Shown in pieces: positions 16,351-45,700 of a stretch of 64,000 nt of DNA. A program made the translations under genes and the position numbers. The stretch covers positions 3,844,001-3,908,000 of the forward strand of contig JANJGN010000052.1 in assembly GCA_026770705.1 (NCBI GenBank). Direction: 5' to 3'. The notes under the pieces were generated by a model. It was not told where the DNA came from and did no database searches. It saw only the letters and a list, made by a program, of their open reading frames with translations. Within the stretch, counting starts at the first letter, position 1; the number at the start of each line of letters is the position of its first letter. The stretch is from Isurus oxyrinchus (Eukaryota).

Positions 16351-16411
16351 ATGGAATATCTGGGAGTGGACAATGATCGGGAAATCTACTTCCTCCTGTC
16401 ACTTCTCCAAG
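16351..16411 (+). CDS. Gene B signal-peptide exon (coding part)
   Basis: MEYLGVDNDREIYFLLSLLQ + G|gtaata, phase 1, joins the V exon as ...LLQVGLSQEW; acceptor at 16330. Confidence 0.75.
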
Positions 16412-19269: not shown

Positions 19270-19566
19270 ATTTCACAGATAAACCCACGATATTCCCTGC
19301 TGAAATTATTGCAGGAAAGCCTGTGGATGTAAGCTGCACCTTCAACACAACGTGCAATGGAACAGCAGCACCTGTCTTAACCTGGGACATTCCCACTGAC
19401 GTACCTGGATCAGTCTCAAACACTGTAACTCAGCATGGTGTCACTCTGACCTATACTTCTGTTCTGACCCTGATCCCATCACTCAAACACCACGGACACA
19501 CTCTCAGCTGCAGAGTGAGATATCCATCTGTTTCATCGGAGCGGACCCTCGTACTAACTGTACAAG
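19270..19566 (+). CDS. Gene B Siglec domain-2 (C-type Ig) exon, intact
   Basis: 297 nt, phase 1-1; DFTDKP...SCTFNTTCNGTAAPVLTW...HHGHTLSCRV. The extra Cys matches the Siglec V-D2 interdomain disulfide. Confidence 0.93.
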
Positions 19567-19779
19567 GTAAGTATGGACATCCTTCATTATACATTCGCTG
19601 GAACAGTCTATATTGTGCACAGCAGGATCCCATAGAAAGGTATTCTGATGAGAACCAGATCATCTGTAGTTTAGGGAAAAACACTAACCAGAAAACAGTT
19701 AATGACAGTTTCTGAACATTAACACTGGAGCTTTTTTTTCCAGCCAAGAAGCTGATAGAGCAGAGCATCATTCACAATA

Positions 19780-20740: not shown

Positions 20741-20974
20741 GGCTTTAAACTAAATAGAGTGTGGGGCGAATGTTTCTGGAGAGGGTATATGTACAGTTAC
20801 AAACCAAAAGGATTTATTAGCATTGCAGGATAGCTGTTTTGGCAATGATACCCAGTGTGTGACAGGAAGGGACACAGTGTCCAAACATAAAAATACATCA
20901 GCAAATAGTGTCAGAGGGGGGGAAATGATAAAAAGACAAAATTAATGGCTCTTTACTTAAATGCACATAGTATT

Positions 20975-21626
20975 TGGAATGTTGGCCTTTATTTCAAAGG
21001 GAATGGAGTATAAAAATAGGGAAGCCTTGCTAAAACTATACAAGGCACTAGTTAGACCACACCTAGAATACTGTGAGCAGTTTTGGTGCCCTTATCTAAG
21101 GAAAGATGTACTGGCATTGGAGGCAGTCCCGAGAAGGTTCACTAGGTTGATCCCAGTAATGAGGGATTTTCATATGAGGAGAGGTTGAGTAGGATGGGCC
21201 TGTACTCATTGGAGTTTAGGAGAATGAGAGCTGACCTTATTGAAACATATAAGATTCTTAGGGTGCTTGACAGGGTAGATGCTGAGAGGTTGTTTCCCCT
21301 TGTGGGAGAGTCTAGGACCAGAGGGCATAATCTCAGAGTAAGGGGTCACCCATTTAAGACAGAGATGAGGAGTTTCTTCTCTCAGAGGGTAGTGAATGTG
21401 TGGAATTCTTTACTGCAGAGATCTGCAGAGGCTGGGAAATTAATTATATTCAAGGCTGAGATACACAGTTTTTTAATCAGTCAGGGAATCAAAGGCTATG
21501 GGGAAGAGGCAGGAAAGTGGAGTTGAGGATTGTCAGATCAGCCATGGTGTCATTGAATGGCGGAGCCTAGTTGATTGGCCGAATGGCCTCCTTCTGCTCT
21601 GACGTCTTGTGGTCTTATGGTCTTAT
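20975..21626 (+). mobile_element. CR1-like LINE 3' fragment
   Basis: LYKALVRPHLEYCEQFW...SLEFRRMRADLIETYK...FFSQRVVNVWN plus 3' UTR. Confidence 0.85.
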
Positions 21627-21629
21627 CAC

Positions 21630-22095
21630 CCTCCAACAGTGCAGAGCTCCCTAATTACTGACCCTCCGACAGTGCAGCACTCTTCCAGTACTGACCCTTC
21701 GACAGTGCAGCATTGCCTCAGTACTGACCCTCCAACAGTGCAGAGATCCCTAATTACTGACGCTCCGACAATGCAGCACTCTTCCAGTACTGACCCTCCG
21801 ACAGTGCAGCATTCCCTAAGTACTGACCCTCCAACAGTGCAGCACTGCCTCAATACTGACCCTCCAACAGTGCAGCACTGCCTCAATACTGACCCTCCAA
21901 CAGTGCAGCACTCCCTCAGTGCTGACCCTCCGACAGTGAAGTACTCGCTCAGTACTGACTATGCGGCAGTGAAGCTTTCACAGTACCCACCCACCATCAG
22001 TACAGCAGGTCCTCAGTACTCACCCTCCAACAGGGCAGCACTCCCTCAGTACTGACCCTCCAACAGTGCAGCACTCCCTCAGTACTGAACTGAAG
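21630..22095 (+). repeat. 33-bp minisatellite array
   Basis: Tandem units. Confidence 0.9.
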
Positions 22096-22212
22096 AGTCT
22101 GCCTGAATTATGTGCTTTGTGGTGAAGGATTGATATTACACCTGTAACATTGTCAGGGTCTCTGAAAGTGCTTCACAGTCAATGTAAGTAACTGATCTTT
22201 ATTCGTTTTTAG

Positions 22213-22485
22213 ATGCACCACAGAATCTCTCAATTACTTTTCATGATATGATTAATGCTTCATGGATCAATATAATTGAGGGGAATTCTGCAGTGATAAT
22301 CTGCTCTGTCGAGAGCTTCCCAGCTTCTAACCTGATGTGGTGACATCTTAATGTCCCAATGAACAGAACAAGTTCCAACAATGAGCTGTGGTTGGTGATT
22401 CCTCACGTTATATCCAGGGACACTGGAGATTATCAGTGTGTGGCAGAGAATGAACATGGAGCAGTGGACGGGTTCATAAACATTC
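22213..22485 (+). pseudogene. Gene B disrupted C2 exon (D3)
   Basis: Copy of the 282-nt exon with CGA>TGA stop at 22341-22343; 3' end and donor lost at the LINE junction. Confidence 0.9.
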
Positions 22486-22487
22486 TG

Positions 22488-23535
22488 TTTTTATTAGTTC
22501 ATGGGATGTGGGTAGTGTTGACAAGACCAGAGATTATTGCCCATCTGTAACTGCCCCTTGAGAAGATGGTGGTGAGCTGCCTTCTTTAACCACTGCAGTC
22601 CATGTGGTGTACGCACACCCACAGTGCTGTTAGGGAGGGAGTTCCAGGATTTTGTCCCAGTGATGGTGAAGGAACGGCCGATATATTTCCAAGTCCCAGG
22701 GCAGACCACCACCTCAAGTTCGCTTCCAAATCACACACCACACTGACTTGGAACTGTCTTGGTGGAAGAGGTTAAGGGTTTGGAAGGTGCTGTCGAAGGA
22801 GCCTTGGTGAGTTGCTGCAGTGCATCTTGTAGATGGTGCACACACTGCTGCCATTGTGTGCCAGTGGTGAAGGGTATGAATGTTTATGCTGGTGGATGGG
22901 CTGTCGATCAAACAAGCTGCTCCTGGATGGTGTCGAGCTTCTTGAGTGTTGTTGGAGCTGCACTTATCCAGCCAAGTGGAGATTATTCCATCACACTCCT
23001 GAAATGTGCCTTGTCCGATGGTGGACAGGCTTTGGGGAGTCAGGAGGTGAGTTACTCACCGCAGAGTTCCCAGCCTCTTACCCGCATTTGTAGCCACATT
23101 ATTTCCTGTTGCCGGGATGTTGCCAGGGCCAATAGTCTTTGCTGTATCCAGTATCATCAGCTGATTCCTGATGTCACGTGGAGTCAATCGAATTGTCTGA
23201 AAGCTGACATCTGTGATGCTGGGACCCTCTGGAGGAGGCCGAGATGGAGCATCCACTCAGCACTTCTGGCTGAACATGGTTGCCAAAGCTTCAGCCTTGT
23301 CGTTTGCACTGATGTGCTGAGCTCCCCCATCATTAAGGATGGGGTTATTTGTGGAACATCCTCCTCCTGTTAGATCTTTAGTTGTCCATCACCATTCATG
23401 ACTGGATGTGGCAGGACTGCAGAGCTTAGATCTGACCCGTTGGTTGTGGGATCGCTTTGCTCTGTCTATAGCATGTTGTTTCCGCTGTTTGGTGTGTATG
23501 TAGTCCTGTGTGTCACCTCAGCAGCTTGGCACCTC
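22488..23535 (-). mobile_element. HER1-like LINE fragment(s)
   Basis: Reverse-strand LINE tail at 22490-22600 plus degenerate RT-region ORFs (PSITDVSFQTIRLTPRDI...LDTAK). Confidence 0.75.
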
Positions 23536-23727
23536 TGTTATATGTGAATCCTCCTTATAGAAACCTGCATGTACATGGATATTATCAATAAATATTACAT
23601 AGATATATGTTATTTGTATAGACCTTTCATGCATAGACAATATCACTTCACAAGTTCAGAATTACTACATGTACATAGGGAACCATTCTCAAACTGTACC
23701 GGAGTCATTCATTGGCTGATTTTACAG

Positions 23728-23824
23728 GGCGAGATTCCAATGAATGGAAAGCAGGATTGCTTGGAGCTGGAATCTGTTTGAGTGTTGGACTGAGTGGATT
23801 CTTCATTTTCAAGTCTGTGAGAAA
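23728..23824 (+). CDS. Gene B transmembrane exon (intact, 97 nt, phase 1-2)
   Basis: tttacag|GG CGA GAT...AGA AA|gtaagt; RDSNEWKAGLLGAGICLSVGLSGFFIFKSVRK; same length and phase as, and homologous to, the gene A TM exon. Confidence 0.85.
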
Positions 23825-23887
23825 GTAAGTGCGAAGGTTTAATTGGTTGATTTCAAACATTTTTTCTTCAACCTTCTCTCCTTATAG

Positions 23888-23944
23888 CAGGAATCAAATC
23901 GAACCATCGTGTTGATGAATATCGAGGTCCTGTTTATGAAAACT
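23888..23944 (+). CDS. Putative gene B cytoplasmic exon (GIKSNHRVDEYRGPVYEN)
   Basis: Polypyrimidine tract plus AG, donor gtgagt and a YxN motif; phase does not match the TM exon 63 nt upstream. Confidence 0.4.
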
Positions 23945-24104
23945 GTGAGTGTGGTTGGGCTTTGAGGAATCAGGTGAGTCACACACCACAGGATCCCCAG
24001 CCTCTCAGCTGCTCCAGTAGCCTGGTTATTGATATGGCTGCTCCACTCCTGTATCTGCAATGTTTTATACAGTCACTCCCAAACCCAACCAAACTCACAC
24101 CCAA

Positions 24105-26190
24105 CACCGTTCAGAATCAATAATCAAACCCCGTTCAGTATCAATAATCAAACCCCGTTCGATATCAATAATCAAACCCCATTCAGTATCAATAATCAAA
24201 CCCCATTCAGTATCAATAATCAAACCCCGTTCAGAATCAATAATCACACCCCGTTCAGTATCAATAATCAAACCCCGTTCAGAATCAATAATCACACCCC
24301 GTTCAGTATCAATAATCACACCCCGTTCAGAATCAATAATCACACCCCGTTCAGTATTAATAATCAAACCCCGTTCAGTATCAATACTCAAACCCCGTTC
24401 AGAATCAATAATCAAACCCCGTTCAGAATCAATAATCAAAACCCGTTCAGTATCAATAATCAAACCCCGTTCAGAATCAATAATCAAACATCATTCAGTA
24501 TCAATAATCAAACCCCATTCAGAATTAATAATCAAACCCCGTTCAGTATCAAAAATCAACCCCCTTTCAGAATCAATAATCAAACTCCGTTCAGGTTCAA
24601 TAATCAAACATCGTTTAGAATCAATAATCAAACCCCGTTCAGTATCAATAATCAAAACCCGTTCAGAATCAATAATCAAACCCCGTTCAGAATTAATAAT
24701 CAAACCCCGTTCAGTATCAATAATCAAACCCCATTCAGAATCAATAATCAAACACCATTCAGTATCTATAATCAAACCCCGTTCAGAATCAATAATCAAA
24801 CCCCGTTCAGTATCAATAATCAACCCCCTTTCAGAATCAATAATCAAACCCTGTTCAGTATCAATAATCAAACTCCGTTCAGGTTCAATAATCAAACACC
24901 GTTTAGAATCAATAATCAAACCCCGTTCAGAATCAATAATCAAACACCATTCAGTATCAATAATCAAACCCCGTTCAGAATAAATAATCAAACCCCGTTC
25001 GGAATCAATAATCAAACACCGTTCAGTATCAATAATCAACCCCCTTTCAGAATCAGTAATCAAACACTGTTCAGAATCAATAATCAAACACTGTTCAGTA
25101 TCAATAATCAAACTCCATTCAGATTCAATAATCAAACACCGTTTAGAATCAATAATCAAACCCCGTTAAGTATCAATAATCAACCCCAGTTCAGAATCAA
25201 TAATCAAACTCCATTCAGGTTCAATAATCAAACAACGTTTAGAATCAATAATCAAACACCATTTAGAATCAATAATCAAACCCCGTTCAATGTCAATAAT
25301 CAAACCCCGTTCAGTATCAATAATCAAACGCCGTTCAGAATCAATAATCAAAGCCCGTTCAGTATCAATAATCAAACGCCGTTCAGAATCAATAATCAAA
25401 CCCCGTTCAGTATCAATAATCAAACGCCGTTCAGAATCAATAATCAAACCCCATTCAGTATCAATAATCAAACCCCTTTCAGAATCAATAATCAAACCCC
25501 TTTCAGAATCCATAATCAAACCCCGTTCAGAATCCATAATCAAACCCCTTTCAGAATCCATAATCAAACCCCTTTCAGGATCAATAATCAAACCCTGTTC
25601 AGGATCAATAATCAAACCCCGTTCAGAATCCATAATCAAACCCCTTTCAGAATCAATAATCAAACCCCTTTCAGAATCAATAATCAAACCCTGTTCAGGA
25701 TCAATAATCAAACCCCATTCAGAATCAATAATCAAACCCCATTCAGAATCCATAATCAAACCCCGTTCAGTATCAATAATCAAACCCCATTCAGAATCAA
25801 TAATCAAACCCTGTTCAGAATCAATAATCAAACCCCGTTCAGTATCAATAATCAAACACTGTTCAGAATCAATAATCAAACCCTGTTCAGTATCAATAAT
25901 CAAACACTGTTCAGTATCAATAATCAAACCCCTTTCAGGATCAATAATCAAACCCTGTTCAGGATCAATAATCAAACCCCATTCAGTGTCAATATTCAAA
26001 CCTCGTTCAGAATCAATAATCAAACCCCGTTCAGAATCAATAATCAAACTCCGTTCAGTATCAATAATCAAACCCCGTTCAGAATCAGTAATCAAACCCC
26101 GTTCAGTATCAATAATCAAACACTGTTCACAATCAATAATCAAACACTGTTCAGTATCAATAATCAAACCCCGTTCAGTATCAATAATTA
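24105..26190. repeat. 24-bp minisatellite (aataatcaaaccccgttcagaatc), ~87 copies
   Basis: Direct inspection; explains the long NNQTPFRI / SIIKPRSE ORFs. Confidence 0.95.
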
Positions 26191-26286
26191 ATGTCTCTAC
26201 TGTGGATGGAATTTTTGATTTGGATCAATAATACTAAACACTGATCACTCTGATTGTCACTCTGATCATTTCTGTTTCTATTACAG

Positions 26287-26403
26287 AAGAAAGATGAAAA
26301 GGTTCTGGAAATGAAATCTAACCGCGGAGTCAATCCTGATACAGATGATGATCTTTACGCAAACTGTGATTTTGCCAAGGATTCTGTTTATGGGAATTTA
26401 TAA
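26287..26403 (+). CDS. Putative gene B terminal cytoplasmic exon with two tyrosine motifs
   Basis: ctattacag|AAG...; KKDEKVLEMKSNRGVNPDTDDDLYANCDFAKDSVYGNL*. Confidence 0.65.
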   Translation, partial: KKDEKVLEMKSNRGVNPDTDDDLYANCDFAKDSVYGNL

Positions 26404-27739
26404 ACTGAGCAAGAATGAGACACACACAGTGTGGGGAGAATACAGAATGGGAGAATCATTCAAAACTCCAATTTACCTTCCTAATATCCACAGGAACTCA
26501 CTCCCAGGAAATAGATTTAAACCTCTTGTTACAATCTGATGGAATTTCTTCGGAATGATCTATCCAGGATGATTGTCTGTGGGTTTCAATTCGAACATCC
26601 TCCTTCAGAATTGTCCCTCACTGTTGGAAACATCCTTCTCTCCAATCTGATTGTAAATGTCTTTAGATATCGTTCGATGATGTACCAGGACAGAACGGAC
26701 AAATTCAATCCCGTGTCCGTGATTATGAGTTAATTTTCATTCTGTTATTCAGCTTCCTGTCTGTCAGTGTTTACAGAATATTCATCAGCCAGTGTAGACT
26801 TCAGGAAATGCAGGATCGGTGGATAATTGGAGCAGAGGAGATTGTTAATATTTACTCACCATTTTGTAGTCAAATGTATTTTCAGAAATATATTTGGATT
26901 TTACACTTCATCGTTAAACAGCGAAACGAACAACAATCTGGGAAACAGGGAAGCAATTTGATTGGAGATTTGAGAAATTCTCTGCAGCTTAGAGGATAAC
27001 TTGTGCTACAGTGCCACCAATGATGGGAGTTCATCAGTACAACGTGACATGTTTACATTGATATAGCCAATGAACATAGGAAATTATGATGTGAAAATTT
27101 GGTTGCAGGTTTATCTTCTTCAATATGTGATGGATGGATGAGACAGCTTTGATAACAGAATGAGACAGAGCTGCAATAAACCATCATTTTAGTCTTTCAC
27201 ACTTGGAGAGTACAATTAGCATCCATCCTGATGGCTGAGTGGATGGGTGGACTGTGCGATGTGTTACAGATTACAGAGACCAACATACTCGATCCTGGTT
27301 CCGCTCTGTGTTTGATGAGATGCTTGGATCAAAGATTGGGAAAATAAATAATCCTCCTGCATTGATCTGTATCTGGTCTCTCCCTCTATCAATGTCCTGA
27401 GGACAGAATTGGGTTCCATGTCCAAAATCAGACACATGCTTTGACTGCCCATTGAATCGGAACAGGAGGAGGCCATTCAGCCCCCTCGAGCCTGCTACTC
27501 AGGAACAAGAGGGCACCTGAAACAAAAACAGAAATGCTGGAGACTGAGTAGTTCTGGCAGCATCTGTGCAGAGATAAACAGAATTAACATTTCGAGTCCG
27601 TATGACCCTTCTTCAGAGTCTCAAAGCAAAAACTCTGTTTCTCTCTCCACAGCTGCTGCCAGACCTGCTGAGTTAATGCAGCATTTTCTGATTTTATTTA
27701 GATTTACAGCATCTGCAGTATTTATTTTTAATGAGAGGA

Positions 27740-28410
27740 GGACATTCAGCAGCTCAAGCCTGTTACACAGGAACAGGAGGAGGCCCCATTCAGCCCCCTC
27801 AAGCCTGTTACCCAGGAACAGGAGGAGGCCCATTCAGCCCCCTCGAGCCTGTTACACAGGAACAGGAGGAGGCCCATTCAGCCCCTCGAGCCTGTTGCAC
27901 AGGAACAGGAGGAGGCCCATTCAGCCACTCAATTCTGTTACATGAGGACAGGAGAAGGCCCATCAGCCTCATGAGCCTATTACACAGGAACAGGAAAAGG
28001 ACATTCAGTCCCTCAACACCCTTCCACAGGAACAGGAGAGACTCTCAGCCCCTCGAGCCTGTTACACAGGAAAAGGAGGAGTCCTATTCAGCCCCATAGA
28101 GCCTGTAACACAGGAACAGGAGGAGGCCATTCAGTCACCTGAGCCTGTTACCCAGGAACAGGAAGAGCACATTCAGTCTCTCAACCCTCTTACACAAGAA
28201 TAGGAAACCTATGCAGTCCCTCGTGCCTGTTTTACAGGATCAAGAGGAGGCCCATTCAGCCCCCTCGAGCCTGTTACACAGGAAGAGGAGGAGGCCCATT
28301 CTGTCCCCTTGAGCCTGTTACACAGGTACAGGAGGCCCATTCAGCCTCCACAAGCTTGTTACACAGGAACATTAGGGGCTCCATTCAGCCACTCAAGCCT
28401 GTTCCACATG
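27740..28410 (+). repeat. ~42-bp minisatellite (cctgttacacaggaacaggaggaggccattcagcccctcgag); also at 15575-15720, 29270-29540, 50850-51170(-)
   Basis: Tandem units. Confidence 0.85.
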
Positions 28411-28414
28411 AACG

Positions 28415-29250
28415 GGAACAAAAACAAAAATAGCTGGAAAAACTCAGCAGGTCTGACAGGATCTGCGGAGACGAACACACTTGACGTTTTGGGTCTGTAT
28501 GACTCTTCATCAGAACTAAGGGAATCGAGAAATGAGGTGACGTTTTAGCTGGTAGAGGGGGTGGGACAGGTAGAGCTGGATTGTGGGCCAGTGATAGGTG
28601 GAGGTAAAGAAGAGGTGGCCAAAGATGTGATAGACAAAAGGACAAAGGGGTGTTGACGGTGGTGATATTATCTGAGGAATGTGCTAATGGGGACATTAAG
28701 GGTAGAAAGCAGGACGAACAAGAGACAGATAGTCCTAGTGGGGGTGGGGTGGGGGAAAGGATTGAAATAGGCTAAAAGGTAGAGATACAACAACAGATGT
28801 AAAACATTTAAAAATAATGGAAATAGGGGGGAAAAGAAAAATATATCAATAAAATAAATATTAAAAATGATAAATTATTGGAAAAAAGGAGATTGGAAAG
28901 GGGGTGGGGATGGAGGAGAGAGTTCATGATCTGAAATTGTTGAACTCAATATTCAGTCGGGAAGGCTGTAAAGTGCCAGGTCGGAAGATGAGGTGCTGTT
29001 CCTCCAGTTTGTGTTGGGCTTCACTGGAACAATGCAGCAGGCCAAGGACGGACATGTGGGCATGAGAGCAGGGTGGGGTGTTAAAATGGCAAGCGACAGG
29101 GAGGTCTGGGTCATGCTTGTGGACAGACCGAAGGTGTTCATCAGAGCGATCACCCAGTCTGTGTTTGGTCTGTCCCATGTAGAGGAGACCACATTGGGAG
29201 CAGTGAAGGCAGTAGATTAAATTGAGGGAAGTGCAAGTGAAATGCTGCTC
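28415..29250 (-). mobile_element. Penelope-like element fragment (GIY-YIG endonuclease end plus tail)
   Basis: YMGQTKHRLGDR..EHLRSV...LPVACHFN...LEEQHLIFR.GTLQP..LNIEF. Confidence 0.8.
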
Positions 29251-29559
29251 CCAATGATGCTCCTAATGTACTCGAGCCTGGTACACAGGAACTGGGGAAG
29301 GCCAATTCAGCCCCTTTAGCCTTTTACACAGGAACAGGAGGAGGCCCACTCAGCCCCATGAGCCTGGTACACAGTGAGAGAAGGAGGCCATTCAGCCCCC
29401 ATGAGCCTGTTACACAGGAACAGGAGGAGGCCCATTCAGCCCCGCGAGCCTTTTACACAGGAACAGGAGGAGGCCCATTCAGCCCCTCGAGCCTGTTACA
29501 CAGGAACAGGAGGAGGCCCAGTCAACCCCTCGAGCTTGTTGCATGTGAACAGTCAATGG

Positions 29560-29865
29560 CCCTTCAAAAACATTCTTGGCACGCAAAGGGTTAACAGTTT
29601 TCTAACAGTGCGAGGCAAAGAGCATCTTTCTCACTTGGTACCAAGCACTTCCTCATTTTGACTCACAGTGACACATCCACCCTTTTTAATTAAACACAAA
29701 TAGGGAGCAGCACAGGAAGAGTTCATTCAGCCCAAGCAGAGCGTGTGGGCAGTTCCTCCCCAGGCGAGCAGTCGGACAGGTCCGGGGTAAGTAACGGAAT
29801 GATTGGAAATCACGGGGGGAGTTCTGAGGGCTCCTAATCCATTGTCCTGTCTTGTAAATCAGCAC
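29560..29865 (+). pseudogene. Relic Siglec promoter/exon-1 fragment with an internal deletion
   Basis: Copy of 15725-15960 fused directly to a copy of 17843-17893. Confidence 0.6.
29645..29666 (+). promoter_or_regulatory. PU.1/ETS (CACTTCCTCATT) plus AP-1 (TGACTCA) composite; also at ~30295-30313, with AP-1 at ~15812
   Basis: Consensus matches immediately upstream of the conserved non-coding first exons. Confidence 0.5.
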
Positions 29866-31626
29866 CTTAATACTGACCCTTCAACAGTGCGGCACTCCCT
29901 CAGTACTGATCCTCCAACATTGCAGCACTCCCTGATTAATGTCCCTCTGACAGTGCAGCACTCCCTCAGTACTGACCCTCAAACAGTGGAGATCTCCCTC
30001 AGTGCTGATCTTACAATAGTGCAGTAATGACCATCCGACAGTGCAGCACTCCCTCAGGACTGACACTGGGCAGTTTCAGTCTACTCTGTGGGGCAGACGT
30101 CCCCTGAATGGGGTCTTGAATCCCACAACATTCTGACCCCCTGAATTTGGCTGTGAAACCCACTGACCCACAGGAGAAACTCCTGGTCAATGACTGTCCA
30201 CCTGTCAGCAGAAATATCAACACAGGGTCAGGACACAAAGGGTTAACAGTTCACCAACATCTCAAAACATGAGCTGCTCTGTCACTTTGATCCAACTTCC
30301 TCATTTTGACTCACAGAGACACATCAACCCTTTCTCATTAAATACACAGAGGGAGCAGCACAGGAAGAGGTCATTCAGCCCAAGCAGAGCGTGTGGGCAG
30401 TTCCTCCCCAGGCGAGCAGTCGGACAGGTCCTGGGTAAGTAACGGAACGATTGGAATTCACTTCCACCACCAACACCGTCCTTTGTTGATGTTGTGACTT
30501 TATAAAGAGAGATTCCAATGAATGATGTCTTTGAAAGATTTCTACTGGTTATTGAGATCTGGGTGTGAGGCTCAAGTCTGTTGTACAGAACATCTTTCTA
30601 GCTCAGGGGATGAGGGAAGTGCAGAGACATGAGCTTTGGGATGTCCTGAGGTGGTGAAAGGTGCTATAGAAATGCAAATCCTTCATTGTTTGTCTTTCTT
30701 AAAGCCTTGTAACTCTCTGCAGAGCACCTATCATCCCACAGAGAATCAAATTAGTCTGTGAAGACATTGTCTAAAAGCAGTTCTGATCTCTCGAGAGGTG
30801 CTGGACAAGAGGTGAGGTCTCATTAACTCCTTTCTCTTTCACAGCTTGAGAGTGAGAAGTGGATGGAATATCTGGGAGTGGACAATGATCGGGAAGTCTA
30901 CTTCCTCTTGTCACTTCTCCAAGGTAATATCATCGTCAGCTTGGACAGATTTATGTTTAACAGTCTTTGTAAAAGATCATTCTTATCTCTTTATCTCTGT
31001 AACCTCCTGCAACTCACCCAAACAACTTCCCAGATCTCTGTGTTACTCCAATTCCGGCCTCTTGACCATCCCCCAATTCCCATCACTCCAGTACTGGTGG
31101 CCGTGCCTTCAGCTGCCTGGGGCCTGAGCTCTGGAATTCACTCCCTAAACCTCGGGGATTGAGGAGATCAGAGGGTTTCATTTTACTGAGAATCACCACG
31201 ACCACATCACAGCTGCAGTGAGAATAGACAGAGAGTCCAGCCCTCACACTTCCTGCACAGTTTCACCATAGCAACCACAATAAGGAAATTTAACAATACT
31301 GAAAGTTAAACTGAAGCTCAGCCCATTCAGTGTTGAGAGATGAGATATTTACACAGTTTCCCTGTGTATCTTGTGGACACTGTGTTGGGTGGAAGACTGG
31401 CTTCACTAAACAGGGTCCTGAGGACCATGAGCCAATGTAGAATGAAATTGTCCACTCCTGTGTCCAGGATTCTGTTCCATCCGTTGTGAAACCTTGGGGA
31501 GTTCCTTGTGTGTCCTGTAGATGGTCCACACTGCAGCCACTGTGCCCCAGTGATGGAGGGGGTGGATATCGAGTCTAGTGGATCTACAAACTATCCAGAG
31601 TCAAATGTTGATATTTCTCTCCCCAG

Positions 31627-32000
31627 TTGGACTGTCACAAGAGTGGAAAGGTGACACTCCACGAGAGGTGACAGCACAGGAAGGTTCATGTGTACCGATT
31701 CCATGTCATTCCAGTTACTTATCAAATTTCGTAGGGAGATCACGTGCGGAATCTGGTTGAAAGGAATAGATGGGAACCCACAGCCTAAATGGTCTATAGC
31801 CTTTCACTCCGAGGGTCACAGTCACAGGGATCAAAGATTCCGCCATCGGACCCGGCTGTCTGGAGACCTGAAAGATGGCGACTGTTCCCTGATTATAAAC
31901 AACATCAGACGGGAAGATGCAGGACCTTATTTTTTCAGAATAGAGTTTGACAGCAGGAATAGTTACAGCTAGTATCCTGTAACCCAGCTTGACGTTTCTG
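31627..32000 (+). pseudogene. Gene C V-set exon, frameshifted
   Basis: Homologous to 18501-18869 and retains YFFRIE, but has a frameshift and a stop. Confidence 0.9.
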
Positions 32001-34339
32001 GTAAGTGCTGTGTTATAATTACTCAACAATTCACATCCAACACTCAATGGGAAATAACACAAACTGTGACGTTTACATAATAACACAAAACACAGCTTAT
32101 TATAACACACTGTCTGATTCTCAATAACCTGGTGATAGCTTCCAGTTCAGTCCTAAAGCAACCTCTAAAAATCACTTTAATATCAATGATGAAAAGCATT
32201 AACTGTACCGACATCTTTCATTCTACATCAGCACTCCCTCAGCGCTGACCCTCTGACAGTGCAGCCCATTCTCAGTGTCCACATTCTCAGACCTCTCAAA
32301 ATGCTTCACAGTCGATAGAAGTTAATTGATCTTTATTTGATTATTGCTGAATGAAGAGACAAGCTGTCTAAACTTTACATCTCGCACACACCATTCTCCA
32401 CGGCAACACCTCCACCTATCAGAGACCACTTGCCAACCAATCAGCACTGTCTTCCCATTAAGTATAAATTGTTGTTCACTTTCTGTTGGTAATTGTGCAT
32501 ACGGGGTTCTTGATTCCCTCCCTGACATCTTAATGTCCCAATGAACAGAAGAAGTTCCAACAATGAGCTGTGGTTGGTGATTCCTCACGTTACATCCAGG
32601 GACACTGGCGACTATCAGTGTGTGGCAGAGAATGAACATGGAGCAGTGGAGGGGTTCATAACCATTACTGTGGAATGTGAGTGTACACAGACTTCAACAT
32701 CTCTCTCAGATTCGAATACTACACAAACACCCTCAAACGTACAGACCTAAATAGACACGTGCAGACACACATATATGACCACACACAAAGACACACTCAC
32801 AAACAAACACACTAGCACAAGACTCCCTCATGGGTTACCTGACCTCCCTCAGTACTGCACTGGAGCGTGGGCTGAATTCTGGGATCTGTGTTCCCATTCA
32901 TATTTATGGAAGAATATGGAAATTACTCGTACAAACACTCAGATGCATAGAGGCACTCATAGATACTCTCTGCATCTCCAACTCTCTCTCTCCCTTTAAG
33001 GAGCTACCTGAAACCTAACCCTTTGACGAATAACTAGTCCCAACTCCTCTTTATCTGATTATGTGATTTTTTTGTGAATCTGAGAGTAAGAGAGAGGTGG
33101 AGAGGTTTAGTAAGAGAATTCCTGCTGATGAAAAGCTTACATCCTGTTCTCACTATTTCCGTGCCCATTATGTCCAAAGCCCCTGTTTATAGTGATGACT
33201 CCCTATGTAAACGTCACACTGTAGTTACAGCCTCCCACCAGTGGTGGCATTGTAGCACTTAATCCTTGTGTTTCCCAGCTTTTCAAGCAAATCTACTTCC
33301 CAGTTTGCTACACAAGCTGGGAGTTCATCGGAATTCAATTATTTCTCAAACGGTAGATTTGATAATTCATTTTATTGAGAACTTCCTCAGCACCTCCCTG
33401 AAGTGTTTACACTCTCCGGGAAGCAGGAATAGGCTGGATGTTGGGGAGTTCATCTTTTCCCAGAGAGTAGGGATCCTCGGGAATGTGCTGTCAGTGGGTG
33501 TGGTGGTTGCTGTCTCTCTGTCACCTTCAAGAGGGATCTGGAGTGGTTACTGACTGGGGGAGAGATCATGGAAGCGGAGAATGATACAGCACAGGAGGAG
33601 GCCATTCAGTCCATGGTGCCTGTGCCAGGTCTTTCAATGTTCTATCCCATCAGATCCACTAACCACCACTCCACTTTGCCCCCATCTTCCTCCTTCAAGT
33701 GTTTATCCAATTTCCCTTTTGAAAGTTCCTATTGAATCTGCTTCCACCGCCCTTTCAGGCAGCACCTTCCAGATGACAACAACTCGCTCTGTCAAAACAA
33801 ATTCTCCTCATCTCCCCCTCCGGTTTGTCAATCTGTGTCCCTCTGGTTACCGACCCTCCTGCCCCTTAAATACATCGATACTGTTCACCTCAACCACTCC
33901 CTGTGGGATCGAGTTCCACATTCTCCCCTCTCTCTGGGTAAAGATTGGAACTGTTTATTAAGCGGGGGTTGTAAGTCCGTGGGGGAGTCCATCTCGATCC
34001 TCCCTGATTCGCACACACGTCCGAGATGGATTTCAACCCTGCACTAAACGTTTCCAGAATTTTCTACAGCACAATCCTGTACACAGTGATGGAGAGAAAC
34101 ATTGGACAGGGAGTCCAACAACACAATGATCCATTCTCACCAATGTTCCACGCTAAGGGGAAAGTTCCGATTGTCCACTCTTAGAGTGTTTACAATGAAA
34201 ACATTCATTCCACATTGAATCCCAGTGGATGGGTCAATAATACAGCAAATGTTGCAGTGATATGAAGCTTGATTGTTCAGCCAGAGTGAGAGATTGAAAG
34301 AGGAGAGTCAGTGATGATTTCTTTCTGTGTGTTCTCTAG

Positions 34340-34479
34340 ACAGTGGAGGAGAGATTCTGCACGTGATCCTGATCCTGGGAATACGAGCTGTGATATTCCT
34401 TGTGGCTGTGGTTATCACTATCGCTGGAGTCTGTGTCTGGGAGAGACAAACAGTGAAAGGAAGTCGACAGACTGTTTGA
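34340..34479 (+). CDS. Activating-type TM + short tail exon (Arg inside the TM helix)
   Basis: ctctag|AC AGT..., phase 1; (Y)SGGEILHVILILGIRAVIFLVAVVITIAGVCVWERQTVKGSRQTV*; Arg codon at 34384-34386. Confidence 0.8.
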
Positions 34480-34599
34480 AGCTTTGTACAGCAACAATCT
34501 GGTCAGTCAGTGCGGACAAATAACGTGTGATGTTGGGTTAAGTGTAATGAAACTGGTCAGTGTCCTGGTTAGAATCACCTTCGTATCAGAGAGGCATTC

Positions 34600-35200
34600 C
34601 AGGACAGTGGGAGACCATTCAGCCCATTGAGTCCATGTTGTCTCTTTGTAGAGCAATCCACTCAGTCCCATTCCCCCGCTCTATCCCCGTATCCCTGCAA
34701 GTTTATTTCCCCTCAAGTGTCCATCCAATTTCCTTTTGAAATTGTTCATCGTCTCCGGTTCCACCATCCTCGTAGGCAGCGAGTTCCAGCTCATTACCAC
34801 TCGCTGTGTAAAAAAGTTCCTCCTCACATCCCCCCTCTGCCCAAAACCTTCAATCTGTGTCCCCCAGTCCTTGTACCATCAGCTAATGGCAACAGCTTCT
34901 CTTTGTCTACCTGATCTAAACCCATCATCATCTTGTACACCTCGATCAGATCCCCCCTCAATCTCCTTTGCTCCAAGGAGAACAACCCCAGCTTCTCCAA
35001 CCCAACCTTGTAGCTAAAATCCCTCATCCCTGGACCCATTCTGCTCAATCTCCTCCCCACCCTCTCAAGGACCCTCACTTCCTTCCCAAAGTGAGGAGAC
35101 CAGAACTGGACACAATACTCTAGTTGTGACCTAACCAGAGCTTTATAAATGTTCAGCATAACCTCCCTGTGTTTGTACTCAATCCTTCGATTTATGAAAA
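34600..35200 (-). mobile_element. CR1-like LINE fragment
   Basis: YKALVRSQLEYCVQFWSP...LEQRRLRGDLIEVYK. Confidence 0.85.
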
Positions 35201-35904
35201 GCTAATTCTTTCCATCAGCACAAACAGCAATTTCCAAGCGGACTCCCATCAGCAGACAGAGTGCAATGAAACATCGGCATGCCTGCTTCTTAATGTACGG
35301 AGAGAAACCTGGAACGAGAGATTCTCCTTCTTCTCCTCAGCAAGCTGAAACTTTTCCTTATACCTGGTGCTCCCCAGTCCTGCTGTGTGGACACATCATA
35401 ACCACGGCATTGTCTGGCTGTGTGCAGCCAACATGGTCGAATAGGAATGAACAGAAATGTGACGTTGCTAAACTCTGTTCTCTGATTGGAATGTGCTTTC
35501 TGAATGCTGCACCTTTTTCATGCTGCGATAGATTGTACGAAGCATTTGGGTTATGAATAAAATTACATTGATTAACTCAAGTGATTAAAATGTTCAGGCT
35601 GTTCTGTAGATATTTAAAGATTAAAATTCTTGTTTTGCTGCAAAATACTTGGCTCAAAGGCATTACTTCATGTTGTCACGTTTTCCAATCAGATGAATTC
35701 CTCTGTCCATCTTTATAATAGAAATTTCCAATGTAAACATGTCACATTGTAACTGCACACACTTGCCAGTGGCTGGTGTGATATCAAAGCTGTCTTGCTG
35801 TCGAGAAACAGCGAGAAATATTCCTGTTGTGTGCATGAACTTCATGTTAGCATGAGACACAGGCATCAGATACAATTTTGTGCAATTTGTACAATGTTCT
35901 TTAG

Positions 35905-36455
35905 ACAGCGCAGCACTCCCTCAGTACTGACCCTCCAACAGCGCAGCACTCCCTCAGTTCAGACCGTCCTACAGTGCAGCACTCCCTCAGTTCAAACCCT
36001 CCGACAATGCAGCACTTCCTCAGTTCAAACCCTCTGACAGTGCAGCACTCCCTCAGTTCAGACCCTCCTACAGTGCAGCACTCCTTCAGATCAGACCCTC
36101 CGACAATGCAGCACTCCCTCAGTTCAAACCCTCCGACAGTGCAGCACTCCCTCAGTTCAGACCCTCCGACTGTGCAGCACTCCCTCAGTTCAAACCCTCA
36201 GACAGTGCAGCACTCCCTCAGTTCAGAACCTCCGACAGTGCAGCACTCTCTCAGTTCAAACCATCCGACAGTGCAGCACTCCCTCAGTTCAAACCCTCCG
36301 ACAGTGCAGCTCTCCCTCAGTTCAAACCCTCCAACAGTGCAGCACTCCCTCAGCTCAGAGCCTCCGACAGTGCAGCACTCCCTCAGCTCAGACCCTCCGA
36401 CAGTGCAGCACTCCCTCAGTACTGAACCTCCGACAGTGCTGCACTACCTCAGTAC
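35905..36455 (+). repeat. 33-bp minisatellite (cagttcaaacc variant)
   Basis: Tandem units. Confidence 0.9.
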
Positions 36456-37949
36456 TTCTCCGCCGATGCTGCCAGACCTGCTGAGTTTTTCCAGCTATTT
36501 CTGTTTCTGTTTCTGTTTTGGATTTCCAGCATCTGCAGTTTTTTTGCTTTTAGTGCTGGGCAGTTCCTCAGCAAGGATTCGGGCCACAAAACATTGCGAG
36601 TGCTGTGGGTCTGCGCCACGATTTAGAGAGCTGTGCTTGGCATGCCTATTCTAGTCCCAGTCCAGTGTGGTGGGGAGAGCCTGGCAGTCCTGGGTTGGTC
36701 GTGCCCAGCATGGTGTGCAGGACGTGGTCAGTCCCTCACACACGTCCATCCTGGGGGTGGGTGGCTTGATACTAGGCCGCAGGTGGCACAATCCCAGTCA
36801 GGGGAGGCATCTGCAGCCTGTCAGTGGGGAGCAGGTAATATAGAGGGTAGGGGTGGGGGTGGGAATCGAGGGGGGCCGGTGGTCTCTGTAAGTCACAGTA
36901 CAATGGGCCTCTAGTTGGAGAGAGGTCAGGTCTACATGGGGCATTGGGATGTCAACATCAGACTGTCTAGGGAGGAGGACTGGGATGTCAACCCCGAATA
37001 AGATCAAGGATTAGAGAGGAAGGGAGGAGACTGATTGGAAGGAGGGGAATGTGCACATTATGCTCCTCCAGCACGATGGGAGGGACTGTGATGGTTACGG
37101 GGGTGGGGGGGGGGTGACGTGTGAGGGGATAGAAGCTTACCTGGTGGTATTGCCTCAGCCTCACCCTTTTTCAAGCTGATCCAATGTCGCAGTTGAAGAA
37201 TAAGCTACAAAACAAATTGGCAGGGGAGGTCTCCCAGGGCCTGTGGGAGACATCACCCACTGCATCTTCGGCCTGTTTGAAGGGGCACCCGAACAATTCC
37301 GGCTTTTCCAAATGATGAGGAAGACACAGCTGCACCCCGAGTCCCCTACTGGGGATCCAGAAGGTTGCAATAGCGCTGCGAGGGACTCATGGGCTCCACA
37401 GTGACTCCCTAATTAGCGACTGGAAGGTTTATGTTCATTTATCTTTATTATCCGTTCATATTGAGCAATGGAGCTCCTGATTTGTCACCTTTCTGTACCT
37501 CGTCCAATGCTTCTGTTATCAGGACTTCCACATCGATGTGAAAGAGCCATGATGATAGCAGACAGTCGCACAATGGGAATAGCACTAGGCCAGTGATCCA
37601 GAGGCCCAGGTGAATGCTTTGAAGGCACGGGTTCAAATCCCACCACGGCAGCTGGAGGAATTTCAATTCGATTAATCAATAAATTTAATTGATTGATACA
37701 TTTTTTTCTTATTCATTTCAGGGATGTTGGTGTCGCTGACTAGGCCAGTATTTGTTGCCCATCCCCAATTGCCTTTGAGAACATCTGGATATCTGAGTTA
37801 GGATCAGGAGTAGGTCACTCAGTCCCTCGAACCTGCTCCGCCATTCAGTAAGATCATGGCTGATCTGATTGTCACCTCAACCTCACATTCCTGCCTAACC
37901 CCAATGACCTTTCACCCCCTTGTTAATCAAGAATCTATCTAGCTCTGTG

Positions 37950-42746: not shown

Positions 42747-45700
42747 CTGGAAAAGCAGGAGCACAATAGGTGAGAACATTCCGGAAAGAAAGAAGGCACC
42801 GCCTCCCTTTGACTCTGGCATCATTTCAATCAGGCGCGTCATTGGAAGGAGGATGGCGCATTTCTCTAGCACCTTTCCCCTCCTCAGGATGGCCCAAAAT
42901 GTTCAACAGCTGATGGAAGGACTTTTTCTGAAGTGAGCTCACCGCTGTAATGTAGGAAACGCAGCAGGCAATTCACGCACAGCAAGATCCCACAAACAGA
43001 AATGTGATAATGGCCCCGATTTTCAGTTTTTTACCAATGTCAGTTGAGGGATAAATGTTTGCCCCAGGAAAGCGGACATAACTCCACCCCATCCAGCCCC
43101 CACCACCCCCTCCACACATACCCCCCAACTCCTGACGCACTTCATCTAAATTGTGGCCATGGAATCCTCTATATCCACCTGAGAGGGCAGATTGGTTGCC
43201 CCAGTTTAATGTCTCATCTGAAAGACAGCGCCTTCAACAGTGCAGCACCCCCTCAGTACTGACCCTCCGACTGTGCAGCACTCCCTCAGTAAGGACTCTG
43301 ACAATGCAGCACATCCTCAGTACTGACCCTCCAACAGTGCAGCACTCCCTCAAGACTGACCCTCTGACAATGCAACACTCCCTCAGTACTAACCCTCCGA
43401 CTGTGCATCCCCCCGCCGGTACTGACCCTTCGACAGTGCAACACTCCCTCAAGACTGACCCTCTGACAATGCAGCACTCCCTCAGTACTGACCCTCTGAC
43501 AATGCAGCACTCCCTCAGTACTGACCCTCTGACAATGCAGCACTCCCTCAGTACTGACCCTCTGACAATGCAGCACTCCCTCAGTACTGACCCTCTGACA
43601 ATGCAGCACACCCTCAATACTGACCCTCCGATAGCTCGGTCATTCCTCAATTACGCCTGGTGGTCCTTTTAATTCAGAGCTGAGAGTCCCAGAGAATCGA
43701 GCAGACACCCTGAACTGACTCTTGCAGTGCAAGTACTGGGAGCGCGCTGGTCATTATCATGCTGCTGTCTGTGGGATCTTACTGTGCGCCAATGGCTGAT
43801 TCTTTTCCCACATTACATCAGTGACCTCACATGAAAGAAAAAAGCACTTGATTGTCTGCGAAACACTTTGGGACGTCCTGATGTGTTGGAAGGCGCTAGA
43901 GAAATGCAAGTCCTCTTTGTCTTTCACTCGATCCTCTAAGGTGTCTGTTGATTAACCAGCCTCTCGGTGTTTGATGTAGGCCTGGTTATAAACAGGTAGA
44001 AGGATCAAATATCAAAAGTGCTTTGGCTGACAGTCAAACCGATTGTGCATTCGGAGAGATTAGATACGGTCTGCACACAATGACTCCAGTCTCTGGCACT
44101 GACTGCTGCCTGGGGACTCCCTTCCACATAACACTCACAACTTGCATTTACACAGCGCCTCTGACATTGCAAAATGTCCCAGCCCACATAACCGGAGCGT
44201 AAATCAGAGAGAAGTCTAACACTGAGTCACATATGGAGATATTAGGGATAGGTGACCAAAAGCTTGGTCAAAGATGTCAGTTTTTAAGGAACGTCTTAAA
44301 GGAGAGAGAGAGAGAGAGAGGCAGAGAGGTTAAGGGAGGGTATTCCGGAGCTCAGGGCCCCAGGAAGCTGAAGGCACGGCCTCCAATGGTGGAGCGATGG
44401 GAATCAGGGGGACCCGGGAGATGCAGTAATGTCAGAGATTTTGGAGGAACATCGGGACCGGAGGAGGTGTTCTCCTGCTCCATATCTCTCTCTCTCTTCC
44501 TCTCATCCACTCCTCCTCTCCCTGTCTCTCTCTCTCCTACTCTTCCGCTCAATTGCCCTCTCTCCCAATCTTTCTCTCCTCTCTCCCTTTTCCTGTCTCT
44601 CTCCCTCTCTCTCCCTGTCTCCTTCTCCCACTCTGTATCTCTCCCTCTCTCTCACACTATTTTTGTACCTTTCGCTCACTCTGTAACTCTCCCTTTCCTG
44701 TTAATTTCTCTCTCTTGGACAATCTCTCTTCCCTTTTCACTTTCCCTCACTCTGCATCTCTTCTTTAATTTCTCCCTCTGTCACTCTCTCCCACCTATGT
44801 TCTTTCCCTTTCACCCCTCCCCGTCCCACTCTCTGTCTCTCTCTTCCAATCCCTCCCTCCCCCATTCCATCCCTCTCTCCGACTCTCGACTCCCAGCCTC
44901 TCTTTAACCCACTCCCAGGCTGGATCAGTCTCCCTCTCACTATTCCCGGCGTGGGTTACATTTAAAATTCCTGTGGGGATATGTTCACTTCCTTGGAATT
45001 GTCTCTTCCCAGCTTTGCAAAAAAAGGAGGGGGGGGGGGGCTCGATTTCAAACATGCCTCCTGAGTATAACCGAGACAGACTGCCACTGAAATCAGCTTG
45101 AAATCAGAAAACTTTCTGTGGAAGAAACGAGCAGGGAGAAACCTTAAAATAAGGAATGAATTTCCACCTACCGTGTCCGGGGAATCCACAGATTTCTCAA
45201 TCGTCGAAGAACCTAAAGCAGTGTCAACCTGCAAAAAGAAAGAATTTATCAGGGAGAAAGTGAGAGGAGGATTGAGGGAGAGGGAGAGAGAGAGAGAGAG
45301 GTACAGGAGAGAGAGGGGGAGGAGGACAGACTTGCATTTCTCTAACGCCTTTCACCACATCCCAAAGCATTTCACAGCCACTGAAGGATGTTTTTGAAGT
45401 GCACTCACACTGTAGGAAATGTGGCAGCTGATTTGTGCACAGCAAGATCCCACAAATAGCAATGTGATCATGGCCTAGATCATCTGTTTTTGGTGATGTT
45501 GGGTGAGGGATAAATATTGGTGCCAGGACACCGGGGAGAACACCCCCTGCTCTTCCTCCAAATAGTGGCTGTGGGATCTTTCACACCCGCCCGAGAGGGC
45601 AGACGGGGGACTCGGTTTAATGTCTCATTCAACATTGTTGTGCTCCCTCAGTACTAACCCTTTGACACTGCAGCACTCCCTTAGTATTAACCCTTCGATA

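What the first reader, a model, noticed from the sequence alone, without database searches (positions are those of the whole stretch)
34340..34479. Unannotated activating-type TM exon with intramembrane Arg
This frame is not shown in the ORF track. A phase-1 exon reads ILHVILILGI-R-AVIFLVAVVITIAGVCVW followed by a 12-aa Tyr-free tail and stop. A basic TM residue is the hallmark of DAP12/FcRgamma-coupled receptors (Siglec-14 Arg; Siglec-15/-16 Lys). The exon is unrelated to the A/B/D TM exon and remains open although upstream gene C exons are broken.
Basis: partly seen in the sequence, partly recalled or inferred. Interest (0 to 1): 0.8.

Follow-up and report, generated by a model that had tools for sequence, protein, structure and literature searches.

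The report
Shark Siglec arginine membrane-anchor exon, orphaned
This is a real, spliced exon that gives shark Siglec-type immune receptors a membrane anchor with a buried arginine and almost no tail, the usual build of an "activating" receptor, but in this stretch of DNA the sensor exons in front of it are broken or missing.

Summary
At 34340 a phase-1 exon with a good acceptor reads SGGE-ILHVILILGIRAVIFLVAVVITIAGVCVW-ERQTVKGSRQTV-stop.

It is not chance and not a repeat:
- The 45-residue peptide finds 9 real relatives among 1.84 billion proteins (best E 7e-14). All are elasmobranch Ig receptors and all keep the Arg.
- Contigs of likely RNA runs from two studies enter the exon exactly at 34340. 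One shows letters of a D2-type Ig exon in front.
- Those contigs leave the exon by a GT..AG joint, 34501 to 35219.

So the exon is 34340-34501. It is followed by a 3'UTR exon and is not the last exon.

Gene models with V-D2-this anchor already stand in public annotation of other sharks (for example Carcharodon "CD33-like", 270 aa). This scan has noted the same exon many times elsewhere in this genome.

Here gene C is gutted. Its V exon has a 1-base loss and a TAG, D2 is absent, and only half of a C2 exon is left. I could not show which V and D2 exons feed this copy. The hybrid with gene B is possible but unshown, and pairing with an adaptor chain is inferred. I file it as a new member of a known kind, of modest interest.

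The parts
34340..34501 (+). Arg-bearing membrane-anchor exon (162 nt): short stalk DSGGE, membrane helix with Arg, 12-residue tail, stop, then 22 nt of 3'UTR
   Evidence: Sequence and frame. Contigs X4 rec12 and X5 rec22 match 34338-34500/1 with 0 other letters. Joint to 35218/9 is GT..AG. Splice-site letters.
34384..34386 (+). CGA codon of the intramembrane arginine (11th residue after the Glu that opens the hydrophobic run, 18 hydrophobic residues behind it)
   Evidence: ILGIRA-x-IF is the same in the window and in 15 relatives.
34477..34479 (+). TGA stop, 22 nt before the exon-exon junction (inside the usual 50-55 nt limit, so by the textbook rule no nonsense-mediated decay is expected)
34502..35218 (+). 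Intron (GT...AG) holding a LINE-type reverse-transcriptase tail on the minus strand (ORF 34824-35159)
   Evidence: Joint in X4 and X5. ORF.
35219..35608 (+). Non-coding 3' exon. AATAAA at 35556 and ATTAAA at 35584. The X5 contig ends at 35608. Part 35416-35581 is 78% like the 3'UTR just behind gene A's Tyr-motif exon (5820-5988).
30845..30923 (+). Gene C leader exon (ATG at 30863; MEYLGVDNDREVYFLLSLLQ), about 90% like gene B's
   Evidence: Joints 30433->30844 and 30921->31625 come from contigs that are not exact matches.
31627..32000 (+). Gene C V-set exon, broken: one base lost between 31746 and 31747, and an in-frame TAG at 31970-31972
   Evidence: Alignment with gene B's V exon, tblastn break, Pfam V-set on the open piece, coordinates.
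32524..32676 (+). Second half only of a C2-set exon (no acceptor, first 47 codons missing). No D2 exon lies between 32000 and 34340.
19270..19566 (+). Gene B D2 (C2-set) exon, ends in phase 1. It is the only plus-strand D2 exon upstream of 34340 in the window, so it is the only possible in-window donor.
   Evidence: Base 19562 is A, where the X1 junction contig has G.

Best explanation
34340-34501 is one genomic copy of a conserved elasmobranch 'arginine anchor' exon. In the family it follows an Ig-domain exon in phase 1. It supplies a five-residue stalk, a single membrane helix with one buried Arg, a 12-residue tail without tyrosine, and the stop codon. A non-coding exon follows. The finished proteins (V-set + C2-set + this anchor, about 270 aa in other sharks) are the activating-type twins of the neighbouring Tyr-motif Siglec-like receptors. 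The most likely mechanism, inferred and not shown, is that the Arg pairs inside the membrane with an acidic residue of a dimeric ITAM adaptor (DAP12, FcR-gamma or zeta type). That adaptor would then carry the signal that the tail cannot. At this locus the exon is the surviving 3' end of gene C. Gene C's own V exon is dead and its D2 exon is deleted, so this copy is probably an orphan. It is either transcribed without a working reading frame of its own or it is silent, in which case the exact-match contigs come from an identical copy elsewhere. Shown: the exon, its splice joints, its conservation, and the decay of gene C. Inferred: adaptor pairing, activating function, and orphan status.
For: Family and conservation:
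- 10 proteins at E<=0.001 among 1,835,955,588. Nine carry the anchor with the Arg aligned, and in 8 of these 9 it is the C-terminus.
- 7 of 55 Siglec-like relatives carry it, including Carcharodon P0011/P0012 (96% identical to the window peptide) and P0015 (V-D2-anchor, 270 aa).
- the source names cover 8 species in 3 shark orders, under Siglec-like, CD22-like, SLAM-like and single-V proteins.
- ILGIRA-x-IF is identical in 16 of 16 sequences. None of the window's 45 residues is private to it.

Splicing:
- contigs of X1, X4 and X5 begin their match at 34338. X1 shows 29 letters of a D2-exon end in front.
- The GT..AG joint 34501->35219 appears in 2 of 4 runs (X4, X5), which are two samples from two studies.
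- In X5 depth is 0 over the 370 nt in front of the exon and 76 on the exon.
- poly(A) signals lie just before the end of the X5 contig.

Context:
- gene C has a frameshift, a TAG, no D2 and only half a C2 exon.
- the neighbouring V exons are Siglec-type. The best solved relative is Siglec-5 (E 3.7e-15), and the YFFR motif aligns.
- genes A and B carry Tyr-motif tail exons, so an inhibitory partner stands beside it.
Against: - The runs are only guessed to be RNA. Contigs show neither strand nor level.
- Earlier notes of this scan report many more copies of this exon in the genome, four on this same piece. The contigs with 0 mismatches may therefore come from another identical copy.
- The letters in front of the two exact-match contigs (44 and 296 letters) were not shown to me, so I do not know which D2 or V they carry.
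- No adaptor was examined. The Arg lies 11 residues in from the outer end of a 29-residue hydrophobic run, which does not tell DAP12 from FcR-gamma.
- No dN/dS was possible. An open 46-codon frame is weak evidence of constraint.
Confidence: 0.65

Rival explanations
1. Hybrid gene. Gene B's leader, V and D2 exons are spliced over about 14.8 kb from 19566 to 34340. This would skip B's own C2, anchor and Tyr-motif exons and the wreck of gene C. One promoter and one ligand-binding head would then serve both an inhibitory and an activating receptor.
For: - Phases fit: 19566 ends in phase 1 and 34340 starts in phase 1.
- Contigs that match the anchor exon with 0 mismatches carry unlaid sequence in front, and in X5 its length (296+2 nt) equals a whole D2 exon (297 nt).
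- Gene C has no D2 exon of its own.
- X5 has depth 0 on gene C's V exon while the anchor exon is covered.
Against: - B has a complete 3' end of its own: C2 exon 22206-22484, anchor about 23730-23828, tail exons 23893-23979 and 26287-26400. These would have to be skipped and read through.
- The only junction letters seen (X1) have G where B has A at 19562.
- Many other copies of the exon, some inside intact V-D2-anchor genes, are reported elsewhere in the genome and could be the source.
- Read laying could not be repeated on B's D2.
Confidence: 0.2
2. The anchor is real, but the Arg does not recruit an ITAM adaptor. It might instead serve retention and quality control, pairing with some other membrane partner, or controlled shedding. 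The short-tailed proteins would then act as decoys for the inhibitory twins.
For: - No adaptor was tested.
- The cassette has no Pfam match.
- It found no mammalian activating receptor at E<=0.001.
- An invariant Cys near the inner end hints at other membrane-proximal features.
Against: - From established knowledge of KIR, LILR, NKp46, Siglec-14/-15/-16 and fish NITR/LITR: a single basic residue in the helix, a tail without motifs and an ITIM-bearing twin next door together form the recurrent signature of adaptor-coupled receptors.
- Strict invariance of the Arg and its neighbours across four ectodomain types fits a conserved protein partner.
Confidence: 0.1
3. Chance open frame or part of a transposable element, never exonic.
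For: The exon is flanked by repeat debris (33579-33818 and 34600-35160).
Against: - Single copy in the window.
- Low depth in its immediate flanks against thousands on the repeats.
- GT..AG joints on both sides.
- E 7e-14 relatives that end annotated receptors.
Confidence: 0.01

Closest known systems
Public gene models of other sharks: Carcharodon carcharias 'myeloid cell surface antigen CD33-like' (P0015, 270 aa) and 'Siglec-12' (P0011/P0012); Scyliorhinus canicula 'Siglec-14 isoform X2' / 'Siglec-13' (P0014/P0016); S. torazame 'CD33-like' (P0001)
   Same: The same exon in the same place...SSERTLVLTVQ | DSGGE-ILHVILILGIRAV...-stop. Identity to the window peptide is 82-96%. The architecture is V-set, C2-set, anchor.
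   Different: Those are intact predicted genes. Here the V exon is broken and D2 is missing. The names are automatic best-hit names, not orthology.
Human paired Siglecs: Siglec-14 (with Siglec-5) and Siglec-16 (with Siglec-11); DAP12-coupled (recalled knowledge)
   Same: An activating twin shares a near-identical sialic-acid-binding head with an ITIM-bearing neighbour, and has a basic residue in the helix and a short tail. The window's V exons are closest to Siglec-5 among solved structures. As with the human SIGLEC14 null allele (recalled), the activating member is the one that is damaged here.
   Different: The anchor exon is not detectably homologous to the mammalian ones: no mammalian hit at E<=0.001. 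The adaptor is unknown. The shark cassette is shared with non-Siglec receptor families.
Siglec-15 (Lys in the helix, DAP12, conserved across vertebrates; recalled, with review abstracts listed)
   Same: A Siglec with a charged helix and adaptor signalling that is old in vertebrates.
   Different: Siglec-15's V domain is a far weaker match (E 4.4e-07 against 3.7e-15 for Siglec-5). It is a single conserved gene, not a member of an expanding paired cluster.
Activating KIR, LILRA/PIR-A, NKp46, Fc-alpha-RI/CHIR-AB1, teleost NITR and LITR (recalled; Fc-alpha-RI and CHIR-AB1 charged helix stated in PMC4016189, passages seen)
   Same: The general design: Ig ectodomain, one basic residue in the helix, no signalling tail, ITAM adaptor, and inhibitory twins in the same cluster.
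   Different: Different Ig families. Here one nearly invariant anchor exon serves several ectodomain families (Siglec-like, CD22-like, SLAM-like, single V).

Membership tests
Adaptor-coupled (activating-type) Ig receptors | Single basic residue inside the membrane helix | tested here: met
   Arg at 34384-34386 within a 29-residue hydrophobic run, KD19 maximum 2.95. The Arg is kept in 9 of 9 real phmmer relatives.
Adaptor-coupled (activating-type) Ig receptors | Short cytoplasmic tail without ITIM, ITSM or ITAM tyrosines | tested here: met
   ERQTVKGSRQTV then stop, no Tyr. Relatives end within 4-12 residues of the helix.
Adaptor-coupled (activating-type) Ig receptors | Working Ig ectodomain joined to the anchor | tested here: inconclusive
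   Met in relatives (V-set + C2-set_2 in P0015, P0001) and in contigs (D2 joined to 34340). At this locus the V exon has a frameshift and a TAG, and D2 is absent.
Adaptor-coupled (activating-type) Ig receptors | Inhibitory twin with a similar ectodomain nearby | tested here: met
   Gene C's 5' part is about 90% like gene B's. B has tail exons with VYENC, LYANC and VYGNL. A has LFYANI and TEYAQI.
Adaptor-coupled (activating-type) Ig receptors | Physical and functional association with a DAP12, FcR-gamma or zeta chain through the basic residue | not testable with these tools
   No adaptor sequence was to hand. Six literature searches found no paper on shark adaptors paired with Siglecs.
Siglecs (CD33-related type) | N-terminal V-set domain with the conserved Arg of the YFFR motif | tested here: met
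   Gene B V exon: Pfam V-set 8.8e-13 and Ig_CD22 3.8e-09. Best solved relative is Siglec-5, E 3.7e-15, with GPYFFRIE aligned on GSYFFRVE. Gene C's relic keeps FFRIE (ORF 31688-31972).
Siglecs (CD33-related type) | C2-set domain(s) behind the V domain | tested here: met
   D2 exon: C2-set_2 1.5e-08.
Siglecs (CD33-related type) | Binding of sialic acid | not testable with these tools
   Needs glycan-binding assays.
Orthologue of mammalian Siglec-14/-15/-16 anchor exon | Detectable sequence homology of the anchor exon | tested here: not met
   no mammalian protein at E<=0.001. Every real hit whose source I looked up is elasmobranch. A 45-residue query has little power, so this is weak.
   Only a self-hit in the window. 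Flanks have low depth, and there are GT..AG joints on both sides. The several copies elsewhere in the genome are gene-family copies according to the scan's notes, which I did not check.

The most novel reading that the evidence does not exclude
One portable arginine-anchor exon has been passed among at least four unrelated Ig-receptor families of sharks (Siglec-like, CD22-like, SLAM-like, single-V). At this locus the orphaned copy is captured by long-range splicing from the intact inhibitory neighbour B. One gene head would then yield both a brake and an accelerator, a paired receptor made by a choice of 3' end rather than by two genes.
Probability: 0.15. Interest if true: 0.65.

Novelty: new member of a known kind. 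Interest (0 to 1): 0.3.

Why it matters
Paired inhibitory and activating receptors are a recurring answer to pathogens that exploit inhibitory receptors. Finding the activating half of a Siglec pair in sharks puts this arms-race design at the base of jawed vertebrates. It also shows a single, almost invariant anchor exon shared by several receptor families, which points to one conserved but still unidentified adaptor partner.

For this window the practical gain is annotation: the exon bounds, a 3'UTR exon, and the finding that gene C is a wreck whose anchor exon survives. The general point is already visible in public gene models, and this scan has reached it several times on other DNA of the same genome. 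This copy adds little beyond an example of loss of the activating member.

Tried and rejected
1. The 3' exon as a decayed ITIM-coding exon. Only 35416-35581 is like gene A's 3'UTR (78% over 169 nt). A local alignment of 35160-35416 with A's coding exon (5500-5820) scored 17, and 169 of 300 shuffles reached that score. No homology was shown, so I dropped the idea.

2. Reading the source gene from the contigs. The X1 V-exon contig (31689-31883) restores the lost base (T behind 31746). But it has 5 other letters, and at 31952 it runs into letters that fit another paralogue's loop. So it is not gene C.

3. Finding the D2+anchor fragment among proteins predicted from run assemblies. A search with gene B's D2 exon returned only P0057 (1 hit among 2 candidates). 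A region search with the anchor of P0015 returned 3 proteins among 6 candidates. Neither helped.

5. Rfam on 30000-36000: 0 matches. The high-depth stretch 32070-32443 is the 33-base satellite and repeat debris, not an RNA gene.

6. Organism B (run X6) has depth 0 on the exon. Its share of words came from the repeat behind 34560.

7. Literature. Six searches gave listings only, with titles and abstract starts. None dealt with shark Siglecs or a shark charged anchor. From PMC4016189 I saw five passages, which are general statements only. I asked for no supplementary files.

8. Search by sequence in the scan's notes: blank.

9. I made no joined (spliced) protein model. The exons were searched apart: anchor, V and D2.

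Full report
WHAT IS THERE

The window holds part of a Siglec-like receptor cluster of a shark. Its proteins are 90-97% identical to Carcharodon carcharias models, so it is probably a lamniform.

tblastn with the window's own exons gives this gene map:
- Gene A (+): repeated C2 exons at 30, 1285 and 2333; a neutral anchor exon about 3440-3540; a Tyr-motif exon at 5522-5791.
- Gene B (+): leader about 16330-16411; V 18501-18869; D2 19270-19566; C2 22206-22484; neutral anchor about 23730-23828; tail exons 23893-23979 and 26287-26400.
- Gene C (+): described below.
- Gene D (-): D2 and nine C2 exons between 63801 and 53874.

The V exons are Siglec-type. Pfam gives V-set 8.8e-13 and Ig_CD22 3.8e-09. 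The best solved relatives are Siglec-5, -8, -10, CD33, MAG, Siglec-7 and sialoadhesin, and the YFFR motif is aligned.

THE OBSERVATION

It is exactly as described. AG stands at 34338-34339 after TTTCTTTCTGTGTGTTCTCT. A phase-1 start at 34340 is followed by the peptide SGGEILHVILILGIRAVIFLVAVVITIAGVCVWERQTVKGSRQTV and TGA at 34477-34479. The hydrophobic run is 29 residues. The Arg is the 11th residue from its outer end, and 18 hydrophobic residues follow it. Mean hydropathy over 19 residues reaches 2.95. Nothing else in the window resembles the exon. The A/B/D anchor exon is a different, neutral, internal exon.

IS IT AN EXON?

I searched the exon peptide alone.

phmmer against 1.84 billion representatives gave 10 hits at E<=0.001:
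- One hit (P0008) is a repetitive protein matched over residues 22-39 only, so I discount it.
- The other nine carry the peptide with the Arg aligned.
- In eight of those nine it is the very C-terminus. In P0010 it lies inside the model, which looks mis-joined.

By their source names the carriers are:
- Siglec-like: Scyliorhinus torazame, Chiloscyllium punctatum, C. plagiosum.
- CD22-like: C. punctatum, Hemiscyllium ocellatum.
- A single-V 'sialoadhesin-like' protein: Rhincodon typus.
- SLAM-like: Mustelus asterias, S. torazame.

A search with P0001 (55 hits among 143 candidates) added Carcharodon P0011/P0012 and P0015 and S. canicula P0014/P0016. In these the anchor directly follows ...SSERTLVLTVQ, the end of D2. 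The other 48 of the 55 end in neutral anchors with Tyr tails or are partial.

ILGIRA-x-IF and a Cys-Val near the inner end are identical in the window and all 15 carriers. I picked that set with a pattern that contains the Arg. But no listed protein has a look-alike anchor without it. Every residue of the window's peptide is also seen in some relative, so this copy has no private change.

RNA-TYPE EVIDENCE

The run search with 34340-34600 listed 23 runs. Of these, 20 hold part of it and none is on record as RNA. The kind is guessed from small contig sets.

I laid X1, X4, X5 and X6 on 30200-35800.

At the 5' side of the exon:
- X4 record 12 and X5 record 22 match 34338-34500/1 with no mismatch, and they begin exactly at the acceptor.
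- X1 shows 29 letters in front that read the end of a D2 exon.
- X5's 850-letter contig carries 296 unlaid letters in front. With the two shared letters, that is one whole D2 exon (297 nt).

At the 3' side of the exon:
- X4 and X5 (two samples, two studies) each hold one contig with a GT..AG joint from 34501 to 35219.
- X5's contig ends at 35608, just behind AATAAA (35556) and ATTAAA (35584).

The exon is therefore 34340-34501, followed by a non-coding exon. The stop lies 22 nt before the junction.

Depth also fits an exon. In X5 it is 0 over 33940-34313 and 76 on the exon bin, though depth from contigs is crude. X6 (another organism) has nothing on the exon.

X1 also holds a second form that is 2.5-3.4% different. 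It is unspliced across 33749-34392, and it reads through the 34501 donor to 34602. This is another copy or another allele.

GENE C

Its 5' part copies gene B: 30292-30986 matches 15799-16465, and 31370-32206 matches 18244-19075, both at about 90%.

The V exon (31627-32000) has lost one base between 31746 and 31747 and has an in-frame TAG at 31970-31972.

Homology with B then jumps from B 19075 to B 22341. The D2 exon and the first half of the C2 exon are therefore gone. What remains is 32524-32676, without an acceptor.

None of the contigs listed on gene C's leader and V exons is an exact match (3-5 other letters each). X5 has no contig there at all.

WHICH HEAD FEEDS THIS COPY?

The only plus-strand D2 upstream in the window is gene B's, and its phase fits. 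But the one junction whose letters I could see (X1, the divergent form) has G where B has A at 19562. B has a full 3' end of its own.

The scan's earlier notes report many further copies of this exon in the genome. Four of them lie on the same piece, at 82 kb to 3.4 Mb from here.

I therefore rate the B-C hybrid at about 0.2. The plain reading is that this is an orphan copy whose exact-match contigs come either from read-through at this locus or from an identical copy.

MECHANISM

The following together form the recurrent signature of receptors that borrow an ITAM adaptor:
- one basic residue in the helix;
- a motif-free 12-residue tail;
- a Tyr-motif twin with a closely similar head beside it;
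- near-invariance of the Arg and its neighbours across four ectodomain types.

This rests on established knowledge of KIR, LILR, NKp46, Siglec-14/-15/-16 and fish NITR/LITR. PMC4016189, of which I saw passages, states the charged-helix rule for Fc-alpha-RI and CHIR-AB1.

Which adaptor is used cannot be read from the sequence. The pairing itself is inferred.

COMPARISON AND NOVELTY

The design is that of Siglec-14/Siglec-5 type pairs, but the anchor exon shows no detectable homology to mammalian ones.

The same exon is already in automatic gene models of eight shark species. Six literature searches found no paper on it (listings only).

This scan has reached the same conclusion on other DNA of this genome (s1-868598, s1-300793, s1-869921, s1-864018), including orphan copies (s1-871578, s1-864017) and a broken one (s1-868605).

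This is therefore a new member of a known kind. The finding is right and the annotation is improved, but the interest is modest.

LIMITS

I could therefore not compare intact loci of other sharks or compute dN/dS.
- The runs' RNA status is a guess.
- I asked for no supplementary files.

Noticed in passing
window 30342-30434 (also 15829-15939 and 29706-29801): Copies of a juxtamembrane cytoplasmic exon (RGSSTGRGHSAQAERVGSSSPGEQSDRSW, like residues 267-294 of Carcharodon P0025) lie upstream of the leader exons of genes B and C. In contigs of X1 and X5 the copy ending at 30434 is spliced (GT..AG) to the leader exon at 30845. It therefore serves as a 5'UTR exon, or it marks read-through chimeras between neighbouring genes.
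   Followed up: partly
window 30863-30923 and 16347-16411: In both B and C the start MIGKSYFLLSLLQ, used by other sharks' models, is out of frame because one T is missing. An upstream ATG (MEYLGVDNDREVYFLLSLLQ) keeps the hydrophobic part in frame. This may be a species-specific leader.
   Followed up: partly
window 33749-34602: Run X1 holds a second form of the anchor exon with its upstream intron. It differs at 22 of 644 letters, at least 19 of them in the intron. It is not spliced at 34501 but reads on to 34602 and then into different sequence. This is a paralogue or allele in which the anchor exon is the last exon.
   Followed up: partly
window 24029-26191: A 2.1-kb minisatellite of 30-base units (open frame NNQTPFRI repeated about 70 times) sits in gene B's intron between its two Tyr-motif tail exons (23893-23979 and 26287-26400).
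   Followed up: no
window 4700-5100, 13030-13290, 19780-20740, 21630-22090, 29865-30067, 35900-36460, 43230-43630, 45640-45985, 63010-63440: Arrays of a 33-base satellite (reads TVQHSLSTDPL in one frame) are scattered through the introns and spacers of the cluster on both strands. It explains the very high contig depth at 32070-32443.
   Followed up: no
window 35416-35581 and 35584-35778 versus 5820-5988 and 7241-7434: The 3' exon behind the anchor exon shares its distal part with the 3'UTR of gene A's Tyr-motif exon (78% and 68%). In gene A that UTR is split by about 1.2 kb of inserted repeats.
   Followed up: partly
protein P0037 (Hypanus sabinus 'Siglec-10'): A stingray Siglec-like protein ends in a different anchor that also has one Arg (LISLAVRGVLFLL...). 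It may be a distant batoid version of the cassette.
   Followed up: no
protein P0010 (Chiloscyllium plagiosum 'Siglec-11'): The anchor peptide lies at residues 48-79, followed by D2 and further domains. The model most likely joins two neighbouring genes.
   Followed up: no
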